Of a DNA stretch of 64,000 bases, positions 166-63,978 are shown in pieces. This DNA comes from Asterias rubens. Taxonomy: Eukaryota. Both the position numbers and the translations under genes were made by a program. Under the pieces are notes generated by a model. The model saw only the letters and a program-made list of their open reading frames with translations. It made no database searches and was not told the DNA's origin. The DNA lies in assembly GCF_902459465.1 (NCBI RefSeq), contig NC_047067.1:62001-126000 (forward strand), written 5' to 3'. How positions within the stretch are numbered: the first letter of the stretch is position 1; each line of letters begins with the position of its first letter.

Positions 166-295
166 CTATACATTTTTGACATCTATTTTTAGACTTTGGT
201 TATAATGGCCGTTCAATGGTCATTTTACATGATGTAGAAAACTAAAAGTTTGTCATGTTTTATCCATTTTGTCAATGTTTCCTTTCTAAATACAG

Positions 296-2357
296 TTCAG
301 GAGATCCTCTTGATACATTACTAGCTCTAGACGTAAAGAAAAGTGAGATCCATAAGATGGATTCTTTAACTCCCCTTCACCGGAGTGAAATGCTGCAACA
401 ACCTTCCTCTGATATCGAAGCTAGAACCGATCCTAACCAAGAGTGTCAAATCGTAAACAGACCTGGCAACTATTGGCTTCACTCAATCAAGAGGAAACAA
501 ATTGCTTGTAGGAAGGCTTCACCGTCTGCCAAGCGTAGAGAAGGGACTGGAGGTGCTGGATCCAATTCCACCAATGAAGAAGACTTGAGGGAACTCAGCA
601 TGATTAACGAAGATCCACTCTCTTTCGTGCCCAAAAAGAAGAAAGCAAAGAAGTACGTTTATCAAATTCCCCCTGAGAATTCTGGCTTTGTTCAGGCAGG
701 TGAAATATCTGAAACTGCTGTTGATTGGCAAGAGCCCTTGGATTGTAGAATGGACAACCAAAATTCCCCTTTACAAGTTGTGAGTGATGCTACCAGCAGA
801 ATGAATGCAGAGCAGCATCATGGTAAGGTGGTACAAGTGGAGATGTCATCAGTTCTTCCTTGGGAGTTGGAGGGTCTGACAAAAATTGAGAGGAACAGGA
901 TCAGAGCTCGGGAGGGAATGAGGAGGCACAGGGAAAAGTTGAAGATGGCAAAGCTTTCTAACCAAGGTTGGCGATGCCATGAAATGCCAGGGATTTCGCC
1001 TGTTGTGGAGAAGACACCCATACCTCCAGGTTCTAAGACTGTGGTCCATAGAGGCTATTTGTCTGCCAGAGAAAAAAAAGGGGGTAAGAGGCTGAAATCA
1101 GATTCACTGAAAGGTTCCAGAGGTAATTCTACCCACAGTAAAGATTACATGATTGCGACTGATGTTAGCACCTCCATAAGAATGTCAGACCTGCCAGTAT
1201 TGTCAGGCGAGGATCTGAATAAGAAAACATTCCAGGTATTTACACCAGTTGTAGCTGAGACCGAGTCAAACATAACATCATTGCATAAAGGTTTGTTTAA
1301 GACAGAGCTCCCTGAAGTACATGTCAAGGGTCTTGGCAAAGAAGCTTTCCGTCTATTTTCGCCAGTGGCAGCTGATGCTACTGCTGTCCAAACTGTTAAT
1401 CCAGGAACACATGTCTCGCCAAATAGGAGGGACAGGAGGAGAAAAGGCTGGTTAAAATCGGAACAAAGATTTGAGAAGAATGCCACCTTGCTTGAGATGC
1501 CAACAAACTCACCAACTCATTCATTGCCAGCATCAGACCAAATTGATTTTACACAGGAACCTTACAGAAGCATGAGCTTGCGTGAACGGAATCGAGTCAG
1601 GGCCAGAGAAGGAATGAGAAGATATCGGGAACGACTAAAAATGGCTCGACAACCATCTCATCCAGCACATCAGAGGGTGGCACACATGTTGCCACGTTCA
1701 GGTAGAGGTACATTCAAACGTGGTTCTCACAAAAAGGAGTTAGACAAGGGGACTGTTTCAGTTGAGGAACCAAGTGGGGTACCTAGGGAGGTTCCCACAA
1801 AGAATCCCAACTCAATGGTGTCGTACTCTGAGATGGTAGAGTATCGAAAGACTGAAATCATGAAGAGACGACGCTCTATCCAGTTGCTTAAAACAAACAC
1901 AGTGAGAAACAAGGCAAGGTTCAGTCAAAGATACATCAAGGAAGGGACTCCACAAGGAGAATCAAGGTCTCAGGGGGTTTTCATCAAAAGGGAGACAGTA
2001 TCAGAAGAAGAATCAGAGGAGCACATGAATGATCCTAAATTAAGTCATGTGAATTTGTTTCCGATTGTGCGACAGCGGGAACAGGGGAGTACAAGTAATG
2101 AAAAAACAGACCAAGAGAAATCCGTGTGCGAGGAGACTCAAGACAACCAAAGCTTGGCAACAGTGTCGTCCATAAGTATTGCTGATGAGGTTGTGGGCAA
2201 TGCAGAGAAGGAGAGATTGGCCTACATCGAGAGGATGAAAAAACATCTTGAAGCGATCCGGAGAAGGAGGCGTATAGATGAGAAAATAGCATGTGGTATG
2301 GACAGGCACGCTGCAATCAGGTACGTACCATGTACATTATGTGTGTGTGCAAAATAA
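296..2357 (+). CDS. Large terminal coding exon of an uncharacterised basic, low-complexity, probably nuclear protein; 5' exons lie outside the window
   Basis: 700-codon ORF 255-2357 in AT-rich DNA. A pyrimidine tract + CAG acceptor at 294-295 suggests the ORF's first 14 codons are intronic. Contains NLS-like PKKKKAKK, two copies of ERNR(I/V)RAREGMRR(H/Y)RE(K/R)LKMA and a SUMO-like IKRE motif. Confidence 0.75.
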
Positions 2358-34049: not shown

Positions 34050-35693
34050 TTAATAATAATAATAAAAAGACTTGTAATTCATTCATTCATTCATTCATTT
34101 TTATTAAAAAACAAACTGGCAGCACGAAGCTGAATAATGTGGCATTACAAGATAACAATATTGATAAAAATAGCATAGATAAAAAAAAAAAAATTGCACC
34201 ACCGCGGGGTACAAAGGAACATTATATAAGAAGACGACAATAAGTAAAAATAAATATTAGATAAACCACTAAAAGACACTTAAAAAAATGCACAGGATGT
34301 TGGGGGAACCCTCTTATACATTGAAACCCCACTATGGAATAAACCAGCTAAAAAAGAGAAACCCTAGCAGTTAAAAACTCTACATATGACAAAAACAATG
34401 ATAGCAAAAAAGGGAAAACAAATTTGATAAAACAGAAAAGATTAACAAACAGTTACAGGATGTGGGAGACCCTCATTTAAGAGGGCATACTAAAGCATTG
34501 AAAATAAAATTTACAGCCCACACGCACACCAATAAAACAAAAGCAAATATGGAAGCTCCAGTCTAAGAGGATTGGTTTAAAAGTTTAGTAAGGAATGGAA
34601 TTGCACTGTTGCCATAGCGCTTAGTCCTATGTTTAGGCACCATATATTTAGTAGCATTGCGAAGACCCATTCTGTGAGTGTTGTTGTTATGAGGGAACCA
34701 ACCGGCATATCTATCAGAGGTACTATATTTAACAGCAAAGTTAGTACATAATTGATCACGTCTATCTTCAAGCGTCCGGAGACCCAATGAGGTCAAGAGC
34801 ATCTGTGTATGTAGTATAGTTGTTCCCAAGGATCACGTGACACGCTCTTTTTTGAATTTTTCAATTTGATTAGTTTGCTGTTTACTGATGCAACCATGCC
34901 ACACAGGAGACGCATACTCAACTGAAGGACGCACATAGCCAACATACACAGATACCACATATGCGCACATATCCACCCTGCTGGGTGTTCAAGGCGCAGT
35001 AAAACCAAAAACAAAACAAAAACAAAACACAACACAAAGAAAAATAGACATAACAAAATTAGTCATTGAAAACCTGTGACATAAGATAAGTTTTGAGAAG
35101 AGACTTGAATTTTGCGGTACAAACACAAGATCGAAGATTAAGTGGTAGAGAGTTCCAGATGCGTGGCGCGGCTGAAGAAAAAGACCTGTCACCCCATGAG
35201 TGTCGAGACTTGGGTTCAATGAGGAGAAGCATGGAACTTGATCGAAGATTCCTTGATAGAGTGTAAACTTGTAGCAGTTCAGAAATATAGTTGGGAGCCT
35301 TGCCATTTAGAGCTTTGTGAACAATGAGCATCAGCTTGAAGATGATTCGTTGAGAGATAGGGAGCCAGTGTAGTTGTTTCAGAATGGGGGTGATAGAACA
35401 GGATTTTCTAGACAGTGTCACAATGCGGGCAGCAGTATTTTGGAGCCGTTGAAGTCGGGAAATCTGGTTGTTAGGAAGACTGTAGAGAAGTGGCACTTTT
35501 GTCCAAGTACTTGCGAATCTTACCTATATTCCTGATGTGATATGATGATAAACGATTGTTGATGTGTGGCTGAAGTGTCATCGATGAATCAAAAATAACC
35601 CCCAAGTTCCGAGCTTTCAGCGAAGGAGCTATCCGAGCATCACCGATGGAGATGTATGGCACTGAAACCTTAGTTAACTGTTGACGTGACCTG
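34050..35693 (-). mobile_element. Young 5'-truncated L2-clade LINE; body 34963-35693, tail 34050-34078
   Basis: SRQQLTKV..ARNLGVIFDS, LQNTAARIVT..LHWLPI..WGDRSFSSAAPRIWNSLP; the 3' end gtgcgc|attacaagtc..(tta)n is split by the nested LINE; nearly identical to 58898-59218. Confidence 0.85.
34079..34960 (-). mobile_element. 5'-truncated CR1-group LINE (RT C-terminus + 3'UTR + (GAAT)n tail) nested in an L2 copy
   Basis: LGLRTLEDRRDQLC...VPKHRTKRYGNSAIPFLTKLLN; tail (attc)n on the plus strand at ~34079-34097. Confidence 0.75.
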
Positions 35694-55000: not shown

Positions 55001-58000
55001 ATTATTTTGTGATATGGATCTACATCTCAACTTCATAATTTGTGATATGGATCAATATCTTGTCTTCATCATCTCAATGATGATTAAATTACAAAAGTCA
55101 AAATGTTGAGAATCAATCAAGTTTGTTTCATCTCAGATCCATCGTCCCTCCTCAAGAAATTAATCACATGACATGCATGGTGTACAGTAAGATTTAAGTA
55201 ATATCTACATGGTCTGCTTCACTCTACTTACCTGTAGAGCGAATACTACAATTGCATTGATGGGGTGGGGTACTATGACTTCAAATCAGACCGTTGTTAC
55301 TGTTGAAACCGAGGCCTTAGTTGCTATAGATCTGTATCATACAGCAACAATTTTATAGAGTATTTACTTATCTATGACCCTACATTCATAAATACCCCAG
55401 ACAGTTTCGCTACACTCCTATTGGTGCAGAGCGTGTCACGTTGGGGGCTGTTTAAACGGTTGATAATGACAAGCTGGAGCTATTTATAATTGGCTGTACC
55501 TGTATAGTTCATTCTTTATTTTGACAATGTTCTTCTGTGTTGTTTAGCTTTGAGGGTATGAATGGGACCCTGCCCCCAGCTGTGCCTACATTGAAAGTCT
55601 TGAGTGGTCTTGGCAAGACATTTAACGGGTTAGTCCACATGGTGCAAGCAATCCTGATTCAGGTACTGTACAGTTAATTTGGGTTTTTATCAAATGGAAA
55701 TGGTGTGAGTTAAAACGAATAGAATACCTAAGTTAATCGGTCCTTTGTTCCTTAAAATAAGTTATGAATTAATCATAATTATGCTTGTTTATTATATAGC
55801 ACACTTATGTAGTAACTAGATCAAGGCGATTAACAACATTATTATCCTTGTTTATCGGGCATACTTTTAGACACTGCCAACTCCATGGGGAGCATACAAC
55901 CCAAATGTTAAGAGAAGCTAGGGAAGTTAAGAGAAGTACCTTGCCCAAGAATGAAGTGTCATGATCAGGAGTTTTAAAGTTAGATGGAATATATGTTTGT
56001 TGTTATTTTAACTTATTCTAGACCATCGTGAAAAGTATTCAAGATTCTGCCAGTGAATACAACATAAAAATTGCAGTCAACTCAGTGCATTGTTTGTCAG
56101 AGGATGGGAATGAGATGTGCCGGTTATTAGCAAAGGTGAGTGTACATGTAGTTGACTGCTTTTACTTGTTCCTTTCTGTATTATTCACATTCTCTTCATT
56201 CCCCTTATTTCCCCATACACTTGACTTATCTAATTATAGATTGGGAGGTCAGGTTGAAATGTCCATTCAAGAAAGCAACTCTTTTGATGTAACAATAGAT
56301 CAATGACCATTGCTCTTAAATGTTTGGTGATCACTCCTAAAAATTAGTGCCAATAAAAACTTAAGAATTATGAGAATCATTTCCTTTTGAAGTAATGTGG
56401 TTATAGAAAAATATATCAGTTTTTATCCCCAAAATATGAATCTGAGATACATTACGAATCATTCTTCCTGCTCTGGATTTGTAACAATCACATTTTGAAT
56501 CCAAATTTTCACAGGATAGTATTGTTGTTATGTTTTTACAGGATTAAAATAGTTGAATGGTTCCAAAAGGTAAATACTTTGCCTTGTATGAATAATGAAA
56601 TATTTGTTTTCTGAAAGGGCATTCATGATCATTTCTCGTTCCAATATGAATCAGTTCCCCTACTTGTGCTTTCAAGGCTCAGTAATCTCTGGTTGTGTAT
56701 TGGGTGCGAGTCTTTCTTTAACAAGTAGCGAAAAACATTGGCAGTCAGTGGATCAGCAAATTAGATTCCATATACACCCTCCCAAGGAAAATACCTGGGC
56801 AGGAAAACATTTTCTAATAATGAGTATTGACTTTTGTTTTCTTGTCACAGGAGGGCGCTATACAATCTCTTCTTGAACTCTGCCAGCAGGCATCTCTTAA
56901 TTCCATGAAGCCAGTTGCTCTAAGAACGGTGGCTAATTTATGCAATGTTGCCGAGGGAAGGCAAGAGCTAGAAAGAGTGAGCGAGAAACTTTGTGTTAAT
57001 TGACAAGTCTTAATCAACAAGTTTTACGTTTACCTAAATATGCATTGTTTCATATAACCTCAAGATGTCCAACCCATCTAAATCCAGCTGCATATTTTGT
57101 ACGATTTTGTTGGACTGTGAGGACAGCATTAAACTGATTATTTGTTGCAGGGTACCAGGCTTACCAGGAGCACCATCAGAGTCAAACTCATATTCAAATC
57201 CTCTAACATTATATTTTAATATTTCAACAAGTTTTACGTTTACTTAAATATGCATTGTTTCATATAACCTCAAGATGTCCAACCCATCTAAATCCAGCTG
57301 CATATTTTGTACGATTTTGTTGGAGTGTGAGGACAGCATTAAACTGATTATTTGTTGCAGGGTACCAGGCTTACCAGGAGCACCATCAGAGTCAAACTTA
57401 TATTCAAATTCTCTTACATTATATTTTAATATTTCAATTGTGCACATGATTATGTTGAAATTATGCAGGTATTACCAATTTATTTAACTGTGGTAAAGTG
57501 AGTTATGTACGACTGACTCTAAACCAAGGACACTGATTGGAAAGGTTTGACCTCCCTATAGTACACACCATACGCTGTTGCTTGACAACACAACATCAAC
57601 GATGGAACATCACTCAATTCCCCATTGCTTGATCTATTGAGTGAGAAAGTATCCTTTCATTCACTAAAGAGATTTGGGGTTGTAAAAATACCCTGTTTTG
57701 GGGTTTCTTATGACACAAGGAGACAACTATTGAACAACCAAACTATTTTACCGTATTATTCTTAATTTAATAAACAGTGGTACATATGTGTTTTTTAGCT
57801 GTGCAAAACAGTTTTTATGTAAAATGTATCTTAAAATTTGGTTGAATAGGCCTACTTGTAGTCAATAGGCCTATACTTGTAGGAACGTTGTAGTCTTTCT
57901 TGTCAAGTGATAATAGTTTCCCATAATAAAGAAAAGTTTGTTGAGATTTTAGGTCAAAATGTTTATTTCCACAAACTTCAGAATATTTTTAACTTTGTTT

Positions 58001-59186
58001 TGTTATAAATTTGCCAGTTGTAAAATTGATATAGGCAAATTTCTCTAGAATGTGACTTTTACTTTTAACAAAAACAGTTATTTCTGACAGTTGCTTATAG
58101 TACAGTATGTTAATTAAACAGTGTTACTTATATCAGTGGAGGTTTAGAAAGTGTTAGGCCTATTCTTTGCCCTGCTGTACAATTAATGACAATCATCCTG
58201 TTCATTGTGAATGTTTTACAGCCCAGTGGGGTAGGGTATGTTGGAGAATGACAAGTTGTTTGTTATGATTGTTTTACAGGCCAGTGGGGTAGAATACCTG
58301 AGTGAAATTTTATCATCTCCAACATCGACAGAGTCGGTGAAGGCGGAGGCAGCCTCTGTCATAGCCCAGATCACATCTCCAAGTATTGACAACTATCATC
58401 ACTTACTGGGCTTCATTGAATACATGGAGGACCTCCTTAAAGAATTAACCGGTAATAAACATTTTTATGGCTCACGATTCTCATGTTAACTATAACAGTA
58501 ATAATAACTAGTTCTTATATAGCATTTTTTACAATAATGCACTACAGTACCCTGGACACTGGGCCAATACCATTTCTTTAATCTTTCTCAGCTCCCTTGA
58601 GGTATACGTACAGCCCCTGGCTTCCATGGAGCTCAAAGCTTTTTCAAACACAATATCAACCTCAGAAAGTTTTTCCCAGAAGGACATGAGGTTTCGCGAG
58701 GGCTTGGCTCAAAGGCAGAGTTTGTCACATTTCATTTTTAATGTTAAATTCATCATATGACAACAAAATATTGTTAACTTAAAATTTTAGGAATAAAAAC
58801 CACAGTTGATTTATTTATTTCTTCTTTACCTTGGGGAAACCTTCAGTAAAACACTGATTTCCAGAGGTGCTCAGCAACTACATACACAGTTACACCTTCA
58901 AGTTCCATGCTTCTCCTCATTGAACCCAAGTCTCGACACTCATGGGGTGACAGGTCTTTTTCTTCAGCCGCGCCACGCATCTGGTACTCTCTACCACTTA
59001 ATCTTCGATCTTGTGTTTGTACCGCAAAATTCAAGTCTCTTCTCAAAACTTATCTAATGTCACGGGTTTTCAATGACTAATTTTGTTGTGTCTGTTTTTC
59101 CTTGTGTTGTGTTTTGTTTTTGTTTTGTTTTTGGTTTTACTGCGCCTTGAACACCCAGCAGGGTGGATATGTGCGCATTACAAGTC

Positions 59187-59218
<32 letters not shown>

Positions 59219-62200
59219 TCATTTTATCACAGCATGCAAAAGAAAGATCTCATTTTCCTTTGTGCCGGTAACTCCTCGAGCCGGGCTACGTCCCGTAGCC
59301 TTAGATCTCAAGGGTCTTTCTCAGGATCCTCGCTGTTCCCAAAAGCGCTGCCTTCTGTAATAGATCTACCCTCACATTTGTCCCTATTTCATCTAGATGT
59401 TTCCCCAGTGCTTTGGGAATGGTGCCAAGTGCTCCAACCACCACGGGGACTACTTTTACCTTTACCTGCCAAATCTTACGAAGTTCCCTGGCCAGGTCCT
59501 GGTACTTCTCGATCTTTTCCATCTCCTTCGAAGCTACCCTTATATCACCTGGCACCGCTATGTCAATGAGATGACACATCTTCTTCGTCTTATCTAATAG
59601 CACAACATCCGGACGCCTATGTTGTATAACATGATCGGTCTGAATGTTAAAGTCCCATAGGATCTTGACCTGGTCGTTCTCTACAACTTTCTCCGGAACA
59701 TGGTCATACCATTTCGCAAGTACTTTGACACCATACTTCTTACACAGATCCCAGTGAATCACCTTGGCCAGCTTGTCATGTCTTCCTTTGTACTCCGTCT
59801 GGGCCATCTTACTGCATTCGCTAACAATATGAAATACAGTCTCCTCTGCTTTATTGCACATTCTACACATAGGAGAGACGTTTGCTTTCTCTATCCTTGC
59901 CTTCATTACATTTGTCCTTAGAGACTGGTCTTGCGCCGCAGTAATCAAGCCCTCTGTTTCCTTCTTTAGTTCTCCACTCTTTAACCAATTCCATGACTTG
60001 CTGCTGGCCACTTCCTCAGTACACCTCAAGAACCGGCCATGAAGTGGTTTGTTCCTCCAATCTTGATGTCTTTCCTCCTTCCTTTCCCTCTTGTACTCTT
60101 TCGGCCCAACTTCGTCTGCCCTCGTGTACCTTTGTGCAACTTTCAACAAGCTCTCCTCGGTCCTCCTGACATGACAATGCAAGCTTCTTCGCTCGATGTT
60201 AACACTGTCCGCCACGCTAAGCAACCCCCTTCCGCCCTCTGACCTCGGAAGATAGAGTCTACTAACATTTGACCGCGGGTGTAGCATGCCATGCATGGTC
60301 ATTAGTTTTCTTGTCCTCCTGTCAGTGACATCTAGATCTTCCTTAGTCCACTCGACAATACCCGCACTGTACCTCATCAAAGACACGGCCCATGTGTTAA
60401 TCGCCTTAATCATGTTCCCCCCGTTTAGTTTAGACTTCAAACATTTCTTTACACGCCTGATGTATTCTGCCTTCAGCCTTACCTTTGATTCCTTGTGAAG
60501 GACATGGTCCGATTCAAGTACACCAAGATACCGATAACTCTCCTCCTCACCCAAAGCCCTCAACTGTGCACCATCTGGCAGAGCAATGCCATCGGAATGT
60601 ACCCTCTTCCCCCTCTTCATGGACATTGAAGCACATTTCTCCAGACCGAACTGCATCCCAATGTCATCACTGAAAATCCTGACGGTCTGCACCAAAGAGT
60701 CGATCTCGGCCTCATTCTTCGCAAACAACTTCAAATCGTCCATAAAAAGCAGATGGTTGATCTTACATCCGTCCTTCTTCATTACATAACCTGCACTCAC
60801 CTTCCTTAGAATCATCGACAGGGGCATCATCGCAAGAACAAACAGCAGCGGAGACAGAGAGTCACCTTGGAAAATACCTCTTCTTATGCATACCTTGCCC
60901 AGATTATCATCGTTGGCTGTCAGATTTGTTCGCCACGTCTTCATGCTCTCACCTAAAAGACGTTTTACTGCATCAGCCACTCCAACCATATCCAGACATT
61001 CCATTATCCATGTGTGCGATACCATGTCATACGCCTTCTTGTAGTCAATCCACGCCATTGCCAAATTAGTCTTTCTGCTCCTGCAGTCCTTCAGTACAGC
61101 CTTATCGATGATAAGTTGATCCTTCGTACCTCTGGACCGCTTCTTACAGCCTTTCTGCTCCTCCGGAAACAACTGCTGGTCATCCATATGGCGATATAGG
61201 TCTTCTGCAATCATACTGGTCAAGAGTTTATACATCACAGGTAAGCACGTGATTGGTCTATAATTACTGGCAATGTTACCTTTCTTGACATCCTTCATGA
61301 TCAGCACTGTTTTTGCCTCAGTCATCCAAGATGGGACCTTACCCTGTACTAGACAGTCTTGCAATTGTAGGGCCATTCGCTCATGCAAACTACGGAAGTT
61401 CTTCAACCAGTACCCATGCACATGGTCCATACCCGGGGCTTTCCAATTTGGCACCTTCTTTATCTGTCTCTTAACCTTGTCCACGTCAATCTGGAACCCT
61501 TCTTGCTGTTGTACCCCTCTCAATTCATCTTTCACATCTGTTAGCCATTCCGCTTGTCGGTTGTGTTTTACTGGTTTGTCCCAAATACCACCCCAGAAAG
61601 TTTTTGCCTCTGTTGGTCTCGGAACCGCTTGCGTGCTGTCAGCCTTCCCATCCAATTCCTTAAACAACTGACGCTGATTGGTGTTAAATAATCTATTCTG
61701 GTGAAATTGTCTAACCCTGTCGTCATACCTCTTCACTTTTGCAGCCTTAGCCTTAACCCTTTGCTTAATCTCCTCTATTACAACACTCACACCCTTACGT
61801 TTGACGTTGTACTTTGTCATAATTGTATTCCTTAAGTCTGAACTATTCAATAAACCCTTATTCATTTGTTCTATTCTACTGAGATCTCTTCGCAAATCTT
61901 TAATTTGACCCTCCAGCCGACGTTTCCACCATGGTGTACTGTTCCCTTGTTGAGACACCTCTACCCCTAACTTTTCCCCTACTACAACTGCCCCTGCAAA
62001 AATAAGACGGTTAGTTTCCGATAAATTATCCGTACTTACCGACCCAAGGACTTTACTTACCACGGCTGACATTTCTGTCAGCCTTTTCCTTGGGACCCGG
62101 CGCAAAGCTGGAATACTCCACCCGTTTGACCCCTTCGCCGCTTCCATCACCTCTTGAAGCCTAGCCTTAATCTGCACTTCCTCCTCCGTGAACTCTACGC

Positions 62201-63978
62201 CCTCCTCATCGTCGATGCCATCATCATCCTGACCATTTCGCAACCCTGGCTGGTTCACCTCATCTTCACTCTGTGAGCTAGCAGCAGCCGCCTCCTCCGG
62301 TATTTGGTGGTTAACAATATCTGTTCCATCACTTTCAGCTTGTACTATCCTCCTCATCTCCTCAATTTCCACATTGGTTAACCACTGGTTCCGTTTGATA
62401 GTACTTATCTGGTCTGCAAGCCGCTGCTCACTAATCTCAAACATTCCTTTATCTTGCCATAGGCTTATCATTCTCCTTCTGTATCCTCTCTTGTCCGGTT
62501 CACTCTTAATATAACAGTCCATCGCAATTTTGTTATCGTTCTTACTCCATTTTCTCCTGGTTCCACCACGAATCCCGTTGTGAGCAGTTTGGATACGATC
62601 TGGTAGCACCTGCTCAGGCATACCAACCAGATCGGGTGAAGGACTTCCTCTCTGGGAGTTTGTCACTCTTTCACCGTTGAATTGATGCTCCATAGCACTC
62701 ATTATTAACATCACAAAATTGTGAGAAAGTTTATAGTTTCAGGGAGAATCACATACAGCAACGCTGTAGAATATCCAACCCTACGAAGACTTAACACTGG
62801 TTGTAATCAAGATGTTCCAAAGGACGCGGATGATGCGCGTGTCCGTTCACTGATTCAATGCACACGGTGCGGTCTACGTTGTAGAAAGTTTTCCGAATAC
62901 GAAAAAAATCCAACCTTTTTCCACCAAAAATAGCAACAAGGTGTTAACTAGTTGCCTTCAAACTTACCCTGCGGTGTCTACCAAGTAGTACCAACAAGGA
63001 GTTAACTTTTGGTGCAAAACAAACAGCGGGAAACAATATTTATCTTCTATAGAATCGAGAGCCGATCTGAAGCAGTGTTNNNNNNNNNNNNNNNNNNNNN
63101 NNNNNNNNNNNNNNNNNNNNNNNNNNNNNNNNNNNNNNNNNNNNNNNNNNNNNNNNNNNNNNNNNNNNNNNNNNNNNNNNNNNNNNNNNNNNNNNNNNNN
63201 NNNNNNNNNNNNNNNNNNNNTAATGAACCTTTTGTTTTTTCAGCATTGTGTGAAAATGCCTCATCAAGTTCTGTTTTTGTCATCTCAACATCTGCAATAG
63301 CCAATATCACCTTCATGGACAGTATGGCCTGTGAATGCCTGGCCAGTTACCACACCACAAGGGCGCTAGTCAAAGGTTGTAAAGGAGGCAAAGCCAGCAC
63401 TCTGTACTGTCAAGATCAGGTAGGAGTTATAAACCATTAAGGAAGTAGATTTACTTACTTTATTTCTTGTGCTAATGTGCCGTTACATAGACTGTTCATA
63501 GATTGGCTGAAAACATAAATCTGAAGTTTAAAGTAGTTTGTTCAATGATTTACATGGTTTGAGTAATGGCACTTAAAGAAACAAAGCTGCAAGATTTGTA
63601 CTTAAGCTTGTAAATACCAATAATTATTTAGTATTATTAATATGACTCAAGATGAAAGACTTGTGAGCAAAAACCATAACGCTGTAATGTTGCATTTATC
63701 TTCAAAAATGTAGGTAGCAACAATATTAGCCAATATGGCCGTCACAGAGCAGTGTCGAAAAGAAATAATTGAATCCGGCGGTACAAGACTCCTGGTGAGT
63801 TTCCTGAGCGCGAGGGCGCCATCATATTCAGGGAAGGAGAGTCCACAGAGTAGTGATAGCGGAGACGTTCAGCAAGCGGCTTTATTATCCTGTGAAAAGG
63901 TGCTTCAGAAAGCTGCAATTGCCTTGGCTAGATTAGCCAGGGATCAGACCAGTGCAGAACACATTCTAGATTTAGAAG
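48249..63978 (+). CDS. insc: Inscuteable homolog (armadillo-repeat spindle-orientation adaptor); 10 coding exons in the window, 3' end outside (whole-gene span)
   Basis: N-terminal LGN/Pins-binding motif DSVERWLQDLRMMTDCECMCILQGKPI; ARM-region AEAASVIAQITSP, SAIANITFMD, DQVATILANM, QKAAIALARL; all junctions GT-AG and in phase. Confidence 0.92.
48630..49006 (+). mobile_element. 5'-truncated CR1/Jockey-group LINE 3' end with (TAA)n and poly(A) tail
   Basis: RCRTKSYSSSFFPRTASLWNSLP..FKRNVN*, followed by a 3'UTR and a long A run at ~48975-49006. Confidence 0.75.
50783..50931. mobile_element. MITE (ggggtcgatttcacaaagagtta TIR family)
   Basis: TIRs with 2 mismatches, internal ctaggacta repeats; same family as the 6379 outer element. 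Confidence 0.75.
51088..51230. repeat. 22-bp minisatellite, ~6 copies
   Basis: Tandem taaaccctccaaaatccaggta. Confidence 0.95.
52018..52210 (+). mobile_element. tRNA/CORE-like SINE relic
   Basis: B-box-like ggttcaaatccc followed by ..acacttgtgcacttaaccat; related inverted relics at ~48500-48560 and ~55790-55970. Confidence 0.45.
52639..52702 (+). CDS. insc: insc coding exon 2
   Basis: (D)NIYILRQRASSISADFAKLY; cccatag| acceptor, TG|gtaagt donor; phase fits. Confidence 0.85.
53698..53821 (+). CDS. insc: insc coding exon 3
   Basis: KLDSGVWDQIHWLCLSLTIRLRTFLHDC...LFQ. Confidence 0.85.
54926..54978 (+). CDS. insc: insc coding exon 4
   Basis: QQHTVLQECARLVKHAE; catacag| acceptor, AG|gtacgc donor. 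Confidence 0.75.
55548..55662 (+). CDS. insc: insc coding exon 5
   Basis: FEGMNGTLPPAVPTLKVLSGLGKTFNGLVHMVQAILIQ. Confidence 0.85.
56022..56135 (+). CDS. insc: insc coding exon 6
   Basis: TIVKSIQDSASEYNIKIAVNSVHCLSEDGNEMCRLLAK; AAG|gtgagt donor. Confidence 0.9.
56851..56976 (+). CDS. insc: insc coding exon 7
   Basis: EGAIQSLLELCQQ...ALRTVANLCNVAEGRQELER. Confidence 0.9.
57016..57437. repeat. 210-bp near-perfect tandem duplication in insc intron 7
   Basis: Identical ORF starts at 57065 and 57275; only a few substitutions between the copies. Confidence 0.95.
58280..58451 (+). CDS. insc: insc coding exon 8
   Basis: ASGVEYLSEILSSPTSTESVKAEAASVIAQITSP...MEDLLKELT. Confidence 0.92.
58898..59218 (+). 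mobile_element. Short young L2 3'-end copy with (TTA)10 tail
   Basis: Near-identical (by eye) to the reverse complement of ~34963-35240; tail at 59187-59218. Confidence 0.9.
59219..62706 (-). mobile_element. R4/Dong-clade-like non-LTR retrotransposon with restriction-like endonuclease; 5' boundary uncertain
   Basis: Single long ORF, short 3'UTR, (TAA)n at the 3' junction and TAATAA next to the ORF start. Confidence 0.85.
59301..62714 (-). CDS. Retrotransposon polyprotein: Myb-like N-terminus, RT, CCHC zinc knuckle, RLE endonuclease
   Basis: Uninterrupted 1137 codons; WKAPG.D, NYRPITCL, GIFQGDSLSPLLF, LFMDD; CRMC...HIVSEC; RPD...IDIAVP...K...KY. The track starts at GTG 62714; ATGs at 62711, 62702 and 62693. 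Confidence 0.95.
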   Translation of the reverse strand: MMLIMSAMEHQFNGERVTNSQRGSPSPDLVGMPEQVLPDRIQTAHNGIRGGTRRKWSKNDNKIAMDCYIKSEPDKRGYRRRMISLWQDKGMFEISEQRLADQISTIKRNQWLTNVEIEEMRRIVQAESDGTDIVNHQIPEEAAAASSQSEDEVNQPGLRNGQDDDGIDDEEGVEFTEEEVQIKARLQEVMEAAKGSNGWSIPALRRVPRKRLTEMSAVVSKVLGSVSTDNLSETNRLIFAGAVVVGEKLGVEVSQQGNSTPWWKRRLEGQIKDLRRDLSRIEQMNKGLLNSSDLRNTIMTKYNVKRKGVSVVIEEIKQRVKAKAAKVKRYDDRVRQFHQNRLFNTNQRQLFKELDGKADSTQAVPRPTEAKTFWGGIWDKPVKHNRQAEWLTDVKDELRGVQQQEGFQIDVDKVKRQIKKVPNWKAPGMDHVHGYWLKNFRSLHERMALQLQDCLVQGKVPSWMTEAKTVLIMKDVKKGNIASNYRPITCLPVMYKLLTSMIAEDLYRHMDDQQLFPEEQKGCKKRSRGTKDQLIIDKAVLKDCRSRKTNLAMAWIDYKKAYDMVSHTWIMECLDMVGVADAVKRLLGESMKTWRTNLTANDDNLGKVCIRRGIFQGDSLSPLLFVLAMMPLSMILRKVSAGYVMKKDGCKINHLLFMDDLKLFAKNEAEIDSLVQTVRIFSDDIGMQFGLEKCASMSMKRGKRVHSDGIALPDGAQLRALGEEESYRYLGVLESDHVLHKESKVRLKAEYIRRVKKCLKSKLNGGNMIKAINTWAVSLMRYSAGIVEWTKEDLDVTDRRTRKLMTMHGMLHPRSNVSRLYLPRSEGGRGLLSVADSVNIERRSLHCHVRRTEESLLKVAQRYTRADEVGPKEYKRERKEERHQDWRNKPLHGRFLRCTEEVASSKSWNWLKSGELKKETEGLITAAQDQSLRTNVMKARIEKANVSPMCRMCNKAEETVFHIVSECSKMAQTEYKGRHDKLAKVIHWDLCKKYGVKVLAKWYDHVPEKVVENDQVKILWDFNIQTDHVIQHRRPDVVLLDKTKKMCHLIDIAVPGDIRVASKEMEKIEKYQDLARELRKIWQVKVKVVPVVVGALGTIPKALGKHLDEIGTNVRVDLLQKAALLGTARILRKTLEI
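63080..63220. other. Assembly gap (N run)
   Basis: 141 N characters. Confidence 1.
63244..63419 (+). CDS. insc: insc coding exon 9
   Basis: LCENASSSSVFVISTSAIANITFMDSMACECL...LYCQDQ. Confidence 0.92.
63714..63978 (+). CDS. insc: insc coding exon 10
   Basis: VATILANMAVTEQCRKEIIESGG...CEKVLQKAAIALARLARD; G|gtacgt donor. Confidence 0.92.

What the first reader, a model, noticed from the sequence alone, without database searches (positions are those of the whole stretch)
58898..62714. Intact R4/Dong-like site-specific retrotransposon at the (TTA)n tail of a young L2
Seen: an unbroken 1137-codon ORF with Myb-like N-terminus, RT (FMDD), CCHC knuckle and RLE nuclease (RPD..D..P..K); its 3' end abuts the (TAA)10 tail of a near-intact L2 copy, and TAATAA remains beside the ORF start. 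Knowledge: R4-clade Dong elements target TAA microsatellites by target-primed reverse transcription. Inference: a potentially active, compact single-protein integrase system that uses another LINE's tail as a renewable landing pad. With the 34-35 kb case, both young L2 copies here were hit at their 3' ends.
Basis: partly seen in the sequence, partly recalled or inferred. Interest (0 to 1): 0.75.

Follow-up and report, generated by a model that had tools for sequence, protein, structure and literature searches.

The report
Dong-like retrotransposon in LINE tail
This is a young, probably still mobile jumping gene of a starfish that inserts only into (TAA)n repeats, a behaviour already known from the insect "Dong" elements, and here it uses the (TTA)n tails left by another jumping-gene family as frequent landing sites.

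Summary
An unbroken 1137-codon frame lies on the minus strand at 59301-62714. It encodes a reverse transcriptase (FMDD), a CCHC knuckle and a PD-(D/E)XK nuclease, and its predicted fold matches R2 proteins end to end. An 82-nt 3' UTR and (TAA)10.7 follow.

The genome (an Asterias starfish, 417.6 Mb) holds at least 281 such 3' ends and at least 16 full-length copies with an open frame at 99-100% identity. Every sampled copy ends in (TAA)n. About 32 of 36 true 5' junctions of truncated copies also abut (TAA)n. Five RT blocks hand-compared with a published alignment give 61-65% identity to Dong/R4 and about 33% to HERO or R2. So this is a Dong-like, (TAA)n-specific element: a new member of a known kind.

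The landing-pad idea is supported. The neighbour is an abundant RT-bearing LINE that always ends in (TTA)4-30. Eighteen such tails genome-wide carry the element, antisense, against 0 in the control.

Four points need correcting:
- The LINE copy here is a 289-bp fragment, not near-intact.
- The TAATAA at the ORF start lies inside the element.
- The element runs at least 365 nt beyond the ORF into a masked N run.
- The 34-35 kb case is a different LINE.

Activity and a 5' ribozyme could not be tested.

The parts
58898..59186 (+). It ends ...GCATTACAAGTC.
   Evidence: 97.9% identical to window 34961-35241. At least 1655 candidates in the genome at about 98% identity. Copies show variable 5' truncation from 211 to more than 1699 nt. 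Longer copies carry RVT_1.
59187..59218 (.). Shared microsatellite. Read on + it is the (TTA)10.7 tail of the LINE. Read on - it is the (TAA)n at the 3' end of the RLE element, the site where reverse transcription was primed.
   Evidence: TRF 100% match. All 29 sampled LINE copies end in (TTA)n. All sampled RLE-element copies end in (TAA)n.
59219..59300 (-). 82-nt 3' UTR of the RLE element
   Evidence: 100% identical in more than 25 other copies, up to the repeat. The exact 27-mer spanning UTR end plus TTA occurs 281 times in the genome.
59301..62714 (-). Single ORF of 1137 codons including the stop (ATG at 62711)
   Evidence: At least 16 other genomic copies have the same frame open at 99-100% amino-acid identity.
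62328..62558 (-). N-terminal helical domain (residues 53-129), possibly Myb-like, the presumed DNA-binding part. There is no zinc finger.
   Evidence: Four helices at pLDDT about 90. W56, W86 and others are nearly invariant. Atlas leads to Myb families at 0.80-0.86. No Pfam hit.
60519..61286 (-). Reverse transcriptase domain (residues 477-732; FMDD at 60735-60746)
   Evidence: Pfam RVT_1, E 2.3e-29. R2 proteins in the PDB: E 3e-28 with the single sequence, 1e-65 with the profile.
59814..59867 (-). CCHC zinc knuckle (residues 950-967), with the conserved Arg between the first two Cys
   Evidence: C950, R951, C953, H962 and C967 are invariant in 36 homologues. zf-RVT hit.
59439..59687 (-). Restriction-like (PD-(D/E)XK) endonuclease (residues about 1010-1092; D1036, D1051, K1067)
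   Evidence: Invariant residues. The fold aligns with R2 through the C-terminus. Weak hits to the PD-(D/E)XK family L_protein_N in 7 of 36 members.
62715..63079 (-). 5' UTR, unmasked part (365 nt). The element continues into the masked run.
   Evidence: 17 other copies match 62650-63079 at 97-100% right up to the edge of the N run.
63080..63220 (.). 141-nt N run that hides the element's 5' terminus and its 5' junction.
   Evidence: In tandem arrays elsewhere, full-length copies begin 17-18 nt upstream of the point equivalent to 63079 (seen by accident; letters not used).

Best explanation
The feature is a full-length or nearly full-length copy of a young non-LTR retrotransposon. It belongs to the restriction-like-endonuclease (R2) group, Dong/R4 clade, and sits in an Asterias starfish genome.

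Its single protein carries four parts: an N-terminal helical (Myb-like?) domain, a reverse transcriptase, a CCHC knuckle and a PD-(D/E)XK nuclease.

The inferred mechanism, by analogy with R2 and Dong, runs in four steps:
1. The protein binds its own RNA, whose 3' end carries (UAA)n.
2. It nicks the (TTA)n strand of a (TAA)n microsatellite.
3. It uses the freed 3' end, which base-pairs with the RNA tail, to prime reverse transcription.
4. The second strand is then cut and the copy is joined, often 5'-truncated.

Because the target is recreated on both sides, new copies can land next to old ones and build head-to-tail arrays.

In this genome a large share of (TAA)n tracts are the (TTA)n tails of other LINEs. 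The element is therefore often found tail-to-tail and antisense to such a LINE, as it is here.

What is shown: the domain content and fold, the copy number and near-identity, the (TAA)n flanks, and the recurrent LINE-tail occupancy.
What is inferred: the cleavage and priming chemistry, current activity, and how the 5' end of the RNA is formed.
For: - Anatomy.
- Fold: the model has pLDDT 85. The top Foldseek hits are R2 target-primed reverse transcription complexes (9nl3, 9nl2, 9dou, 8gh6) at E 1e-33 to 1e-36 over 870-1080 columns. The profile against PDB R2 proteins gives E 1e-65 from the RT through the RLE.
- Clade: identical residues in five RT blocks (97 positions, hand count against PMC5678591 Additional file 7) are Dong 59, DongAa 63, R4 59, HERO-1_SP 32 and R2Bm 33.
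- Youth and number: there are 281 exact 3' ends. At least 16 other full-length copies have an open frame at 99-100% aa identity. Many 3' ends are 100% identical.
- Target, 3' side: all 35 distinct 3' junctions lie in (TAA)n.
- Target, 5' side: of 43 alignment starts, 24 have a perfect (TAA)n directly upstream and about 8 more have one within 12 nt. Most of the rest are internal breaks.
- Tandem copies: 14 of the 35 junctions are followed by another copy of the element.
- LINE tails: the neighbouring family always ends in (TTA)n. There are 1051 exact tails, and 18 of them are occupied, on 13 contigs, against 0 in the control. The truncation points of both partners and the tail lengths differ between loci.
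- Other families: four other flanks are termini of dispersed repeats.
- Literature: Dong elements target (TAA)n (PMC3812793).
Against: - No formal RT phylogeny was run. Named reference sequences could be read in a paper but not fed to the tools, so the clade call rests on a hand count.
- The window's 5' terminus and 5' junction are masked. Neither full length nor a (TAA)n on that side can be shown for this copy.
- Pfam does not recognise the N-terminal domain as Myb.
- A few 5' junctions lack (TAA)n: L052 has (CAG)n upstream, and L063 and L089 are joined directly to unique DNA.
Confidence: 0.85

Rival explanations
1. (TAA)n is simply the element's own templated tail. The element inserts more or less at random, and its position next to the LINE end is chance.
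For: LINEs of several clades carry their own short-repeat tails, and the neighbouring LINE does exactly that. The element's RNA very probably ends in (UAA)n as well.
Against: 5'-truncated copies are preceded directly by (TAA)n, including solitary copies where unique DNA lies beyond the repeat. Eighteen composites place the element exactly at the LINE's terminal nucleotide plus tail, always antisense, against 0 in the reversed-pattern control. All four other neighbouring flanks tested also end at the repeat boundary.
Confidence: 0.04
2. The LINE-tail/element composites are not independent insertions. They are copies of one ancestral composite, spread by segmental duplication or by read-through (3' transduction) of the LINE.
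For: One array on C1 at 26.58-26.61 Mb repeats the same element-plus-flank unit several times, so duplication does occur. L063 and L089 carry only 23 and 73 nt of the element after the LINE tail, which could be taken for transduced pieces.
Against: Across the loci the LINE part is 41, 47, 289, 495, 1119 or more than 1697 nt long. The element part is 23, 73, 375, 490, 1420 nt or full length. The tract between them varies from 4 to more than 30 units. The places lie on 13 different contigs.
Confidence: 0.05
3. The element recognises the conserved 3' end of L2-type LINEs itself (sequence or structure next to the tail), not merely (TAA)n. On this reading it would be a true parasite of LINE tails.
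For: About 16 of 21 non-self 3' junctions abut the reverse complement of a retroposon terminus. Several of these share an AGCGC...CAAAGCGC-type motif close to the repeat. The only two (TAA)5+ tracts in the 64-kb window are both LINE tails.
Against: Several copies sit in (TAA)n next to unrelated, non-repeat-looking flanks (L005, L015, L029, L030). Copies also land in the tails of their own family (14 of 35). The distance from the LINE end to the element varies from 12 to more than 100 nt of repeat, which argues against a fixed recognition site. No census of all (TAA)n tracts was possible, so enrichment beyond availability is untested.
Confidence: 0.1
4. The element belongs to the HERO clade (some HERO families are microsatellite-specific) or to another RLE clade, and only mimics Dong in its target.
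For: HERO is known from sea urchin (HERO-1_SP in the published alignment). Some HERO families are reported to target microsatellites (PMC4640811). No formal tree was built here.
Against: The signature blocks YRPITCL, IDYKKAYD, GIFQGDSLSPL, FMDDLKLFA and ETEGL..AQDQ are shared with Dong and R4. They are absent from all HERO, NeSL, Utopia, CRE and R2 rows of that alignment. The hand count is 59-63 identities out of 97 for Dong/R4 against 32 for HERO-1_SP.
Confidence: 0.05

Closest known systems
Dong (Bombyx mori) and DongAg, DongAa, DongBg, DongFr; R4 clade of RLE-type non-LTR retrotransposons
   Same: Single ORF in the order RT, CCHC, RLE. Insertion into (TAA)n microsatellites (PMC3812793). RT signature blocks 61-65% identical in five blocks. 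The conserved Arg between the first two Cys of the knuckle, noted for Dong in PMC5678591, is present as R951.
   Different: The host is an echinoderm. There are hundreds of copies, with at least 17 open full-length ones. LINE tails are used often and the element forms head-to-tail arrays. Whether it has the 5' HDV-like ribozyme shown for Dong and R4 (PMC3774820) could not be tested, because the 5' terminus is masked.
R4 (Ascaris lumbricoides)
   Same: Same clade by RT signature (59 of 97 positions). Same domain order.
   Different: R4 inserts into a specific site of 28S rDNA. This element inserts into (TAA)n.
R2 (Bombyx mori, zebra finch, turtle; solved TPRT complexes 8gh6, 9dou, 9nl2, 9nl3)
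   Same: The whole-protein fold matches (TM 0.57-0.75 over 870-1080 columns). The RT, linker, CCHC and RLE are homologous (E 1e-65 with a profile). The mechanism is presumed to be the same target-primed reverse transcription.
   Different: Only 16-18% identity. There is no N-terminal zinc finger (a single Cys in the first 130 residues). The target is a microsatellite, not 28S rDNA. RT signature blocks are only about 34% identical.
HERO clade (for example HERO-1_SP of sea urchin)
   Same: An RLE-type LINE with a single ORF, present in echinoderms. Some families are reported to be microsatellite-specific (PMC4640811).
   Different: RT signature blocks differ (32 of 97 positions). HERO has MDD(L/V/I)T instead of FMDDLKL, and LDL.NA(Y/F)G instead of IDYKKAYD.
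R1-clade microsatellite-specific LINEs (Waldo, Mino, Kibi, Koshi)
   Same: They insert into simple repeats in one orientation (PMC3812793).
   Different: They use an APE-type endonuclease and have two ORFs. No APE domain is present here.

Membership tests
RLE-type (R2-group) non-LTR retrotransposons | Single ORF with RT followed by a CCHC knuckle and a C-terminal PD-(D/E)XK nuclease; no APE domain | tested here: met
   The fold matches R2 through the C-terminus.
R4/Dong clade | RT domain groups with R4 and Dong references rather than HERO, NeSL, CRE or R2 | tested here: met
   Hand comparison with the named rows of the published RLE-LINE alignment (PMC5678591 Additional file 7). Identities out of 97: Dong 59, DongAa 63, R4 59, HERO-1_SP 32, R2Bm 33. 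This is not a formal tree, because the reference sequences could not be passed to the tree tools.
Dong | Orientation-specific insertion into (TAA)n, with the repeat on both sides | tested here: met
   35 of 35 distinct 3' junctions. 24 perfect plus about 8 near-perfect among the 5' junctions of truncated copies. For the window's own 5' junction this could not be tested, because it is masked.
Dong / R4 | HDV-like self-cleaving ribozyme at the very 5' end of the element (PMC3774820) | not tested
   The first ~17-18 nt of the element fall in the masked run 63080-63220, and the operators forbid looking those letters up in other copies. Rfam on the unmasked part (58800-63079) found nothing, which is uninformative without the 5' strand of P1.
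R2 sensu stricto | Insertion at the conserved 28S rDNA site; N-terminal zinc finger(s) plus Myb | tested here: not met
   All flanks are (TAA)n. There is no Cys/His motif in residues 1-130. Rfam finds no rRNA nearby.
HERO clade | HERO-type RT motifs | tested here: not met
   32 of 97 identities with HERO-1_SP; the signature blocks differ.
L2 clade (the neighbouring LINE) | APE plus RT ORF2 grouping with L2; short-repeat 3' tail | tested here: inconclusive
   RVT_1 is present in longer copies. The (TTA)n tail and variable 5' truncation are shown.

The most novel reading that the evidence does not exclude
The element and the (TTA)n-tailed LINEs may form a two-tier system. The LINEs seed thousands of short (TAA)n tracts. 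The Dong-like element colonises them, and while doing so it lengthens the tract and regenerates it on both sides. In that way it would make better targets for itself, drive head-to-tail arrays, and drive local (TAA)n expansion. (TAA)n tracts at its 3' ends have a median of 66 nt, against 24 nt for unoccupied LINE tails (p = 1.6e-6), and tracts beyond its 5' junctions often exceed 150 nt. If so, it would be a retrotransposon that manufactures its own landing pads, and a measurable cause of microsatellite growth.
Probability: 0.35. Interest if true: 0.6.

Novelty: new member of a known kind. Interest (0 to 1): 0.4.

Why it matters
The element extends the (TAA)n-specific Dong lineage to echinoderms, with an unusually clean data set: hundreds of near-identical copies, many with open frames, in a chromosome-scale assembly.

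Three uses follow:
- It is a good natural system for asking how an R2-type protein without zinc fingers reads a 3-bp repeat.
- It allows a test of how one retrotransposon family's by-product (LINE tails) becomes another family's niche.
- It allows a test of whether such elements drive microsatellite expansion.

R2-type proteins are currently being developed for site-specific DNA insertion (PMC13580325, PMC12222951), so a relative with a different and simple target is of practical interest for comparison. It does not reveal a new kind of system.

Tried and rejected
- **5' terminus and 5' junction of the window copy.** These are hidden by the N run 63080-63220. A genome fetch of the same place (L031) shows no N directly upstream of the anchor. 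I did not print or use those letters.
- **Accidental sight of masked-equivalent letters.** While tabulating the flanks of other copies, searches printed the 17-18 nt that precede the equivalent of window 63079, for three tandem arrays (L033, L045, L051). I use only the distance. I wrote none of the letters into the window or the report, and I ran no ribozyme fold on them.
- **Rfam** on 58800-63079 gave only a chance-level snoRNA hit at E 0.85.
- **Myb test.** Pfam on 36 homologues at E up to 1 found no Myb family. A single-sequence fold of residues 45-135 was poor (pLDDT 62) and contradicted the full-length model, so it was discarded. The atlas gave Myb-type leads only below 0.9.
- **Formal RT phylogeny.** No named R4, Dong or HERO sequences are reachable by the sequence tools. 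Cluster look-up gave only 'uncharacterized protein' names (Asterias amurensis, Diadema, Lytechinus).
- **R4 and Dong papers.** The original papers (PMC307436, PMC309301) are not held.
- **Pattern length.** A shorter one worked.
- **The 34-35 kb case as a second Dong hit** is rejected. The element matches the window only once.

Full report
**What is there**

On the minus strand an open frame runs from 62714 to 59301, 1137 codons. The listed start is GTG, and the next codon, at 62711, is ATG. Pfam finds a reverse transcriptase at residues 477-732 and the 'zf-RVT' knuckle at 933-971.

- FMDD at residues 657-660.
- A CCHC knuckle (C-x2-C-x8-H-x4-C) at 950-967.
- RRPD at 1033-1036, followed by D1051, P1055 and K1067.

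In an alignment with 35 homologues of 31-53% identity these residues are invariant. The stop codon is followed by an 82-nt 3' UTR and then (TAA)10.7 on the element's strand, at 59218-59187.

**Fold**

A full-length AlphaFold model built on that alignment has mean pLDDT 85. Its best structural matches are the solved R2 retrotransposon proteins caught in target-primed reverse transcription (9nl3, 9nl2, 9dou, 8gh6). The E-values are 1e-33 to 1e-36 over 870-1080 aligned columns. Human LINE-1 ORF2p comes next and spliceosomal Prp8 after that. By sequence, R2 proteins are also the best PDB hits, at E 3e-28 with the single sequence and 1e-65 with the profile. The profile match runs from before the RT to the end of the nuclease. 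No apurinic-type endonuclease is present.

The N-terminal 52 residues and residues 129-172 are predicted disordered. Between them lies a four-helix domain (53-129) with nearly invariant tryptophans. It has a single cysteine, so it is not a zinc finger. Pfam does not call it Myb in any of 36 members. The protein atlas lists Myb-type clusters as its nearest named neighbours, but at 0.80-0.86, which is below the tool's reliable range. 'Myb-like' is therefore plausible but not shown.

**Boundaries**

That is wrong. Those letters are codons 3-5 of the ORF. Seventeen other genomic copies match window 62650-63079 at 97-100%, right up to the edge of a 141-nt run of N at 63080-63220. The element therefore has at least 365 nt of 5' UTR and continues into the masked stretch.

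I did not read them in the genome's own copy of this place (L031). Tabulating the flanks of other copies did print, by accident, the start of three full-length copies that follow another copy's tail. I use only the distance from that: full-length copies begin 17-18 nt upstream of the point equivalent to 63079. The window's own 5' terminus and 5' junction remain unverified. For the same reason I ran no ribozyme fold.

**Copy number and age**

The genome is 417.6 Mb in 150 contigs. It is an Asterias starfish.

- The exact 27-mer spanning the 3' UTR end plus two TTA units occurs 281 times, and 0 times for the reversed control.
- Among the 41 candidates scored out of 1627, at least 16 further copies carry the full frame open at 99-100% amino-acid identity. 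Three more have a single stop.
- Many 3' ends are 100% identical over 234 nt.

This is a very young family, and the window copy is one of many equivalent ones. 'Active' is therefore an inference from near-identity.

**Target**

Every one of 35 distinct 3' junctions in the fetched loci ends in (TAA)n, from 3 to more than 75 units.

On the 5' side I left out full-length copies, to stay clear of the masked-equivalent zone. That gave 43 alignment starts inside the element:
- 24 have a perfect (TAA)n directly upstream.
- About 8 more have it within 12 nt, separated by a few extra or duplicated bases.
- Most of the rest are internal deletions or rearrangements, not junctions.
- The exceptions are L052, which has (CAG)n upstream, and L029 and L009.

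Solitary truncated copies such as L050 show unique DNA, then (TAA)n, then the element. So the upstream repeat is not always the tail of a preceding copy. Fourteen of the 35 3' junctions are followed by another copy of the element, giving head-to-tail arrays. This is the behaviour described for Dong elements of silkworm, mosquito and snail (PMC3812793).

**Clade**

HERO elements occur in echinoderms and some are microsatellite-specific (PMC4640811), so the target alone does not decide the clade. No named reference sequences can be reached by the sequence tools. However, the RLE-LINE alignment published with PMC5678591 (Additional file 7) could be read.

I compared five conserved RT blocks (97 positions) by hand. 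Identical residues:

| Reference | Identical of 97 |
|---|---|
| Dong (Bombyx) | 59 |
| DongAa | 63 |
| R4 (AAA97394.1) | 59 |
| Sea-urchin HERO-1_SP | 32 |
| R2Bm | 33 |

The blocks YRPITCL, IDYKKAYD, GIFQGDSLSPL, FMDDLKLFA and ETEGL..AQDQ are shared with the Dong and R4 rows only. This supports Dong/R4 membership, but it is not a tree.

**The neighbour**

Window 58898-59186 (+) is the 3' end of an abundant repeat, with at least 1655 candidates at about 98% identity. All 29 other sampled copies end ...GCATTACAAGTC followed by (TTA)4-30 and then unrelated DNA. The (TTA)n is therefore that family's own tail. Copies are truncated at variable 5' points, from 211 to more than 1699 nt. An ORF ends about 110 nt before the tail, and it holds an RVT_1 domain in longer copies.

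So the neighbour is a LINE. I did not test whether it is L2. The window copy is a 289-bp stump, not 'near-intact'.

**Landing pads**

The exact pattern [LINE end + (TTA)n up to about 100 nt + reverse complement of the element's 3' end] occurs at 18 places on 13 contigs, against 0 for the reversed control. The exact LINE tail 23-mer occurs 1051 times. At least 1.7% of this subfamily's tails are therefore occupied, and at least 6% of the element's 3' ends lie in them.

The composites are independent events:
- The LINE part measures 41, 47, 289, 495, 1119 or more than 1697 nt.
- The element part measures 23, 73, 375, 490, 1420 nt or full length.
- The tract lengths differ between loci.

The orientation is always antisense and tail-to-tail, as a strand-specific (TAA)n target requires.

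Of the 21 3' junctions not followed by another copy of the element, 6 abut this LINE family or older subfamilies of it. About 10 abut other sequences that look like reverse-complemented retroposon ends. Four of those were tested. All four are dispersed repeats with 80 to about 2000 candidates, whose homology stops within 0-18 nt of the repeat boundary. The only two (TAA)5+ tracts in the 64-kb window are both LINE tails.

The simplest reading is that LINE tails are hit because they are where (TAA)n is found, not because the LINE itself is recognised. I could not run a census against solitary (TAA)n tracts, so that distinction is open.

**Tract length**

(TAA)n at the element's 3' ends has a median of 66 nt, against 24 nt for 26 unoccupied LINE tails (Mann-Whitney p = 1.6e-6). 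Beyond the 5' junction in L002, L004 and L019 the repeat runs for more than 150 nt. Either the element prefers long tracts or it adds repeats when it inserts. This is unexplained, and it is the most interesting loose end.

**The 34-35 kb case**

The second LINE copy (minus strand, roughly 35660 down to 34961) is broken 8 nt before its tail by an 880-bp fragment (34960-34081). That fragment is from a different LINE, with the C-terminal part of an ORF and an (AATG)n tail. The rest of the LINE end, plus TTTT(TTA)4, follows at 34080-34051. The Dong-like element matches the window only once. So this is not a second example.

**Verdict**

The finding is a real, well-supported Dong-like (TAA)n-specific retrotransposon. 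It is new for echinoderms but of a known kind. Its frequent use of LINE tails is real and follows from its target. What remains untested: a formal tree, the 5' terminus and a possible HDV-like ribozyme (known for Dong and R4, PMC3774820), expression, insertion polymorphism and the biochemistry.

Noticed in passing
window 34081-34960 (minus strand), with 34051-34080 and 34961-~35660: An 880-bp 5'-truncated fragment of another LINE interrupts the second copy of the (TTA)n-tailed LINE 8 nt before its tail. The fragment carries the end of an ORF2-like frame and an (AATG)n tail. This gives a nested LINE-in-LINE in the same orientation.
   Followed up: partly
window 63080-63220: The 141-nt N run falls exactly on the element's 5' terminus and 5' junction. 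The genome fetch of the same place (L031) shows no N directly next to the anchor, so this is masking rather than an assembly gap. The letters were not read.
   Followed up: no
loci L001-L060 versus L062-L090: (TAA)n tracts at the element's 3' ends have a median of 66 nt, against 24 nt for unoccupied LINE tails (p = 1.6e-6). Tracts beyond 5' junctions often exceed 150 nt. This could be a preference for long tracts or repeat addition by the element.
   Followed up: partly
G000 C1:26584829-26611550 (L020-L025): At least six copies of the element lie in the same orientation within 27 kb. Several are followed by the same repeat flank at 90% identity. This looks like tandem or segmental duplication of an element-plus-flank unit, on top of retrotransposition.
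   Followed up: no
L063:1697-1732 and L089:1697-1847: Only 23 nt and 73 nt of the element's 3' end sit after a LINE tail and are joined directly to unique DNA, with no repeat on the far side. These are either extreme 5' truncations or a different end-joining outcome.
   Followed up: partly
L052 (G000 C16:9508055-9508232): A copy truncated at element position 253 is preceded by (CAG)n instead of (TAA)n.
   Followed up: no
window 57014-57437: Two tandem copies of a 210-bp unit at 97% identity.
   Followed up: no
window 255-2357 (+): A 700-aa open frame with no Pfam match at E up to 0.01.
   Followed up: partly
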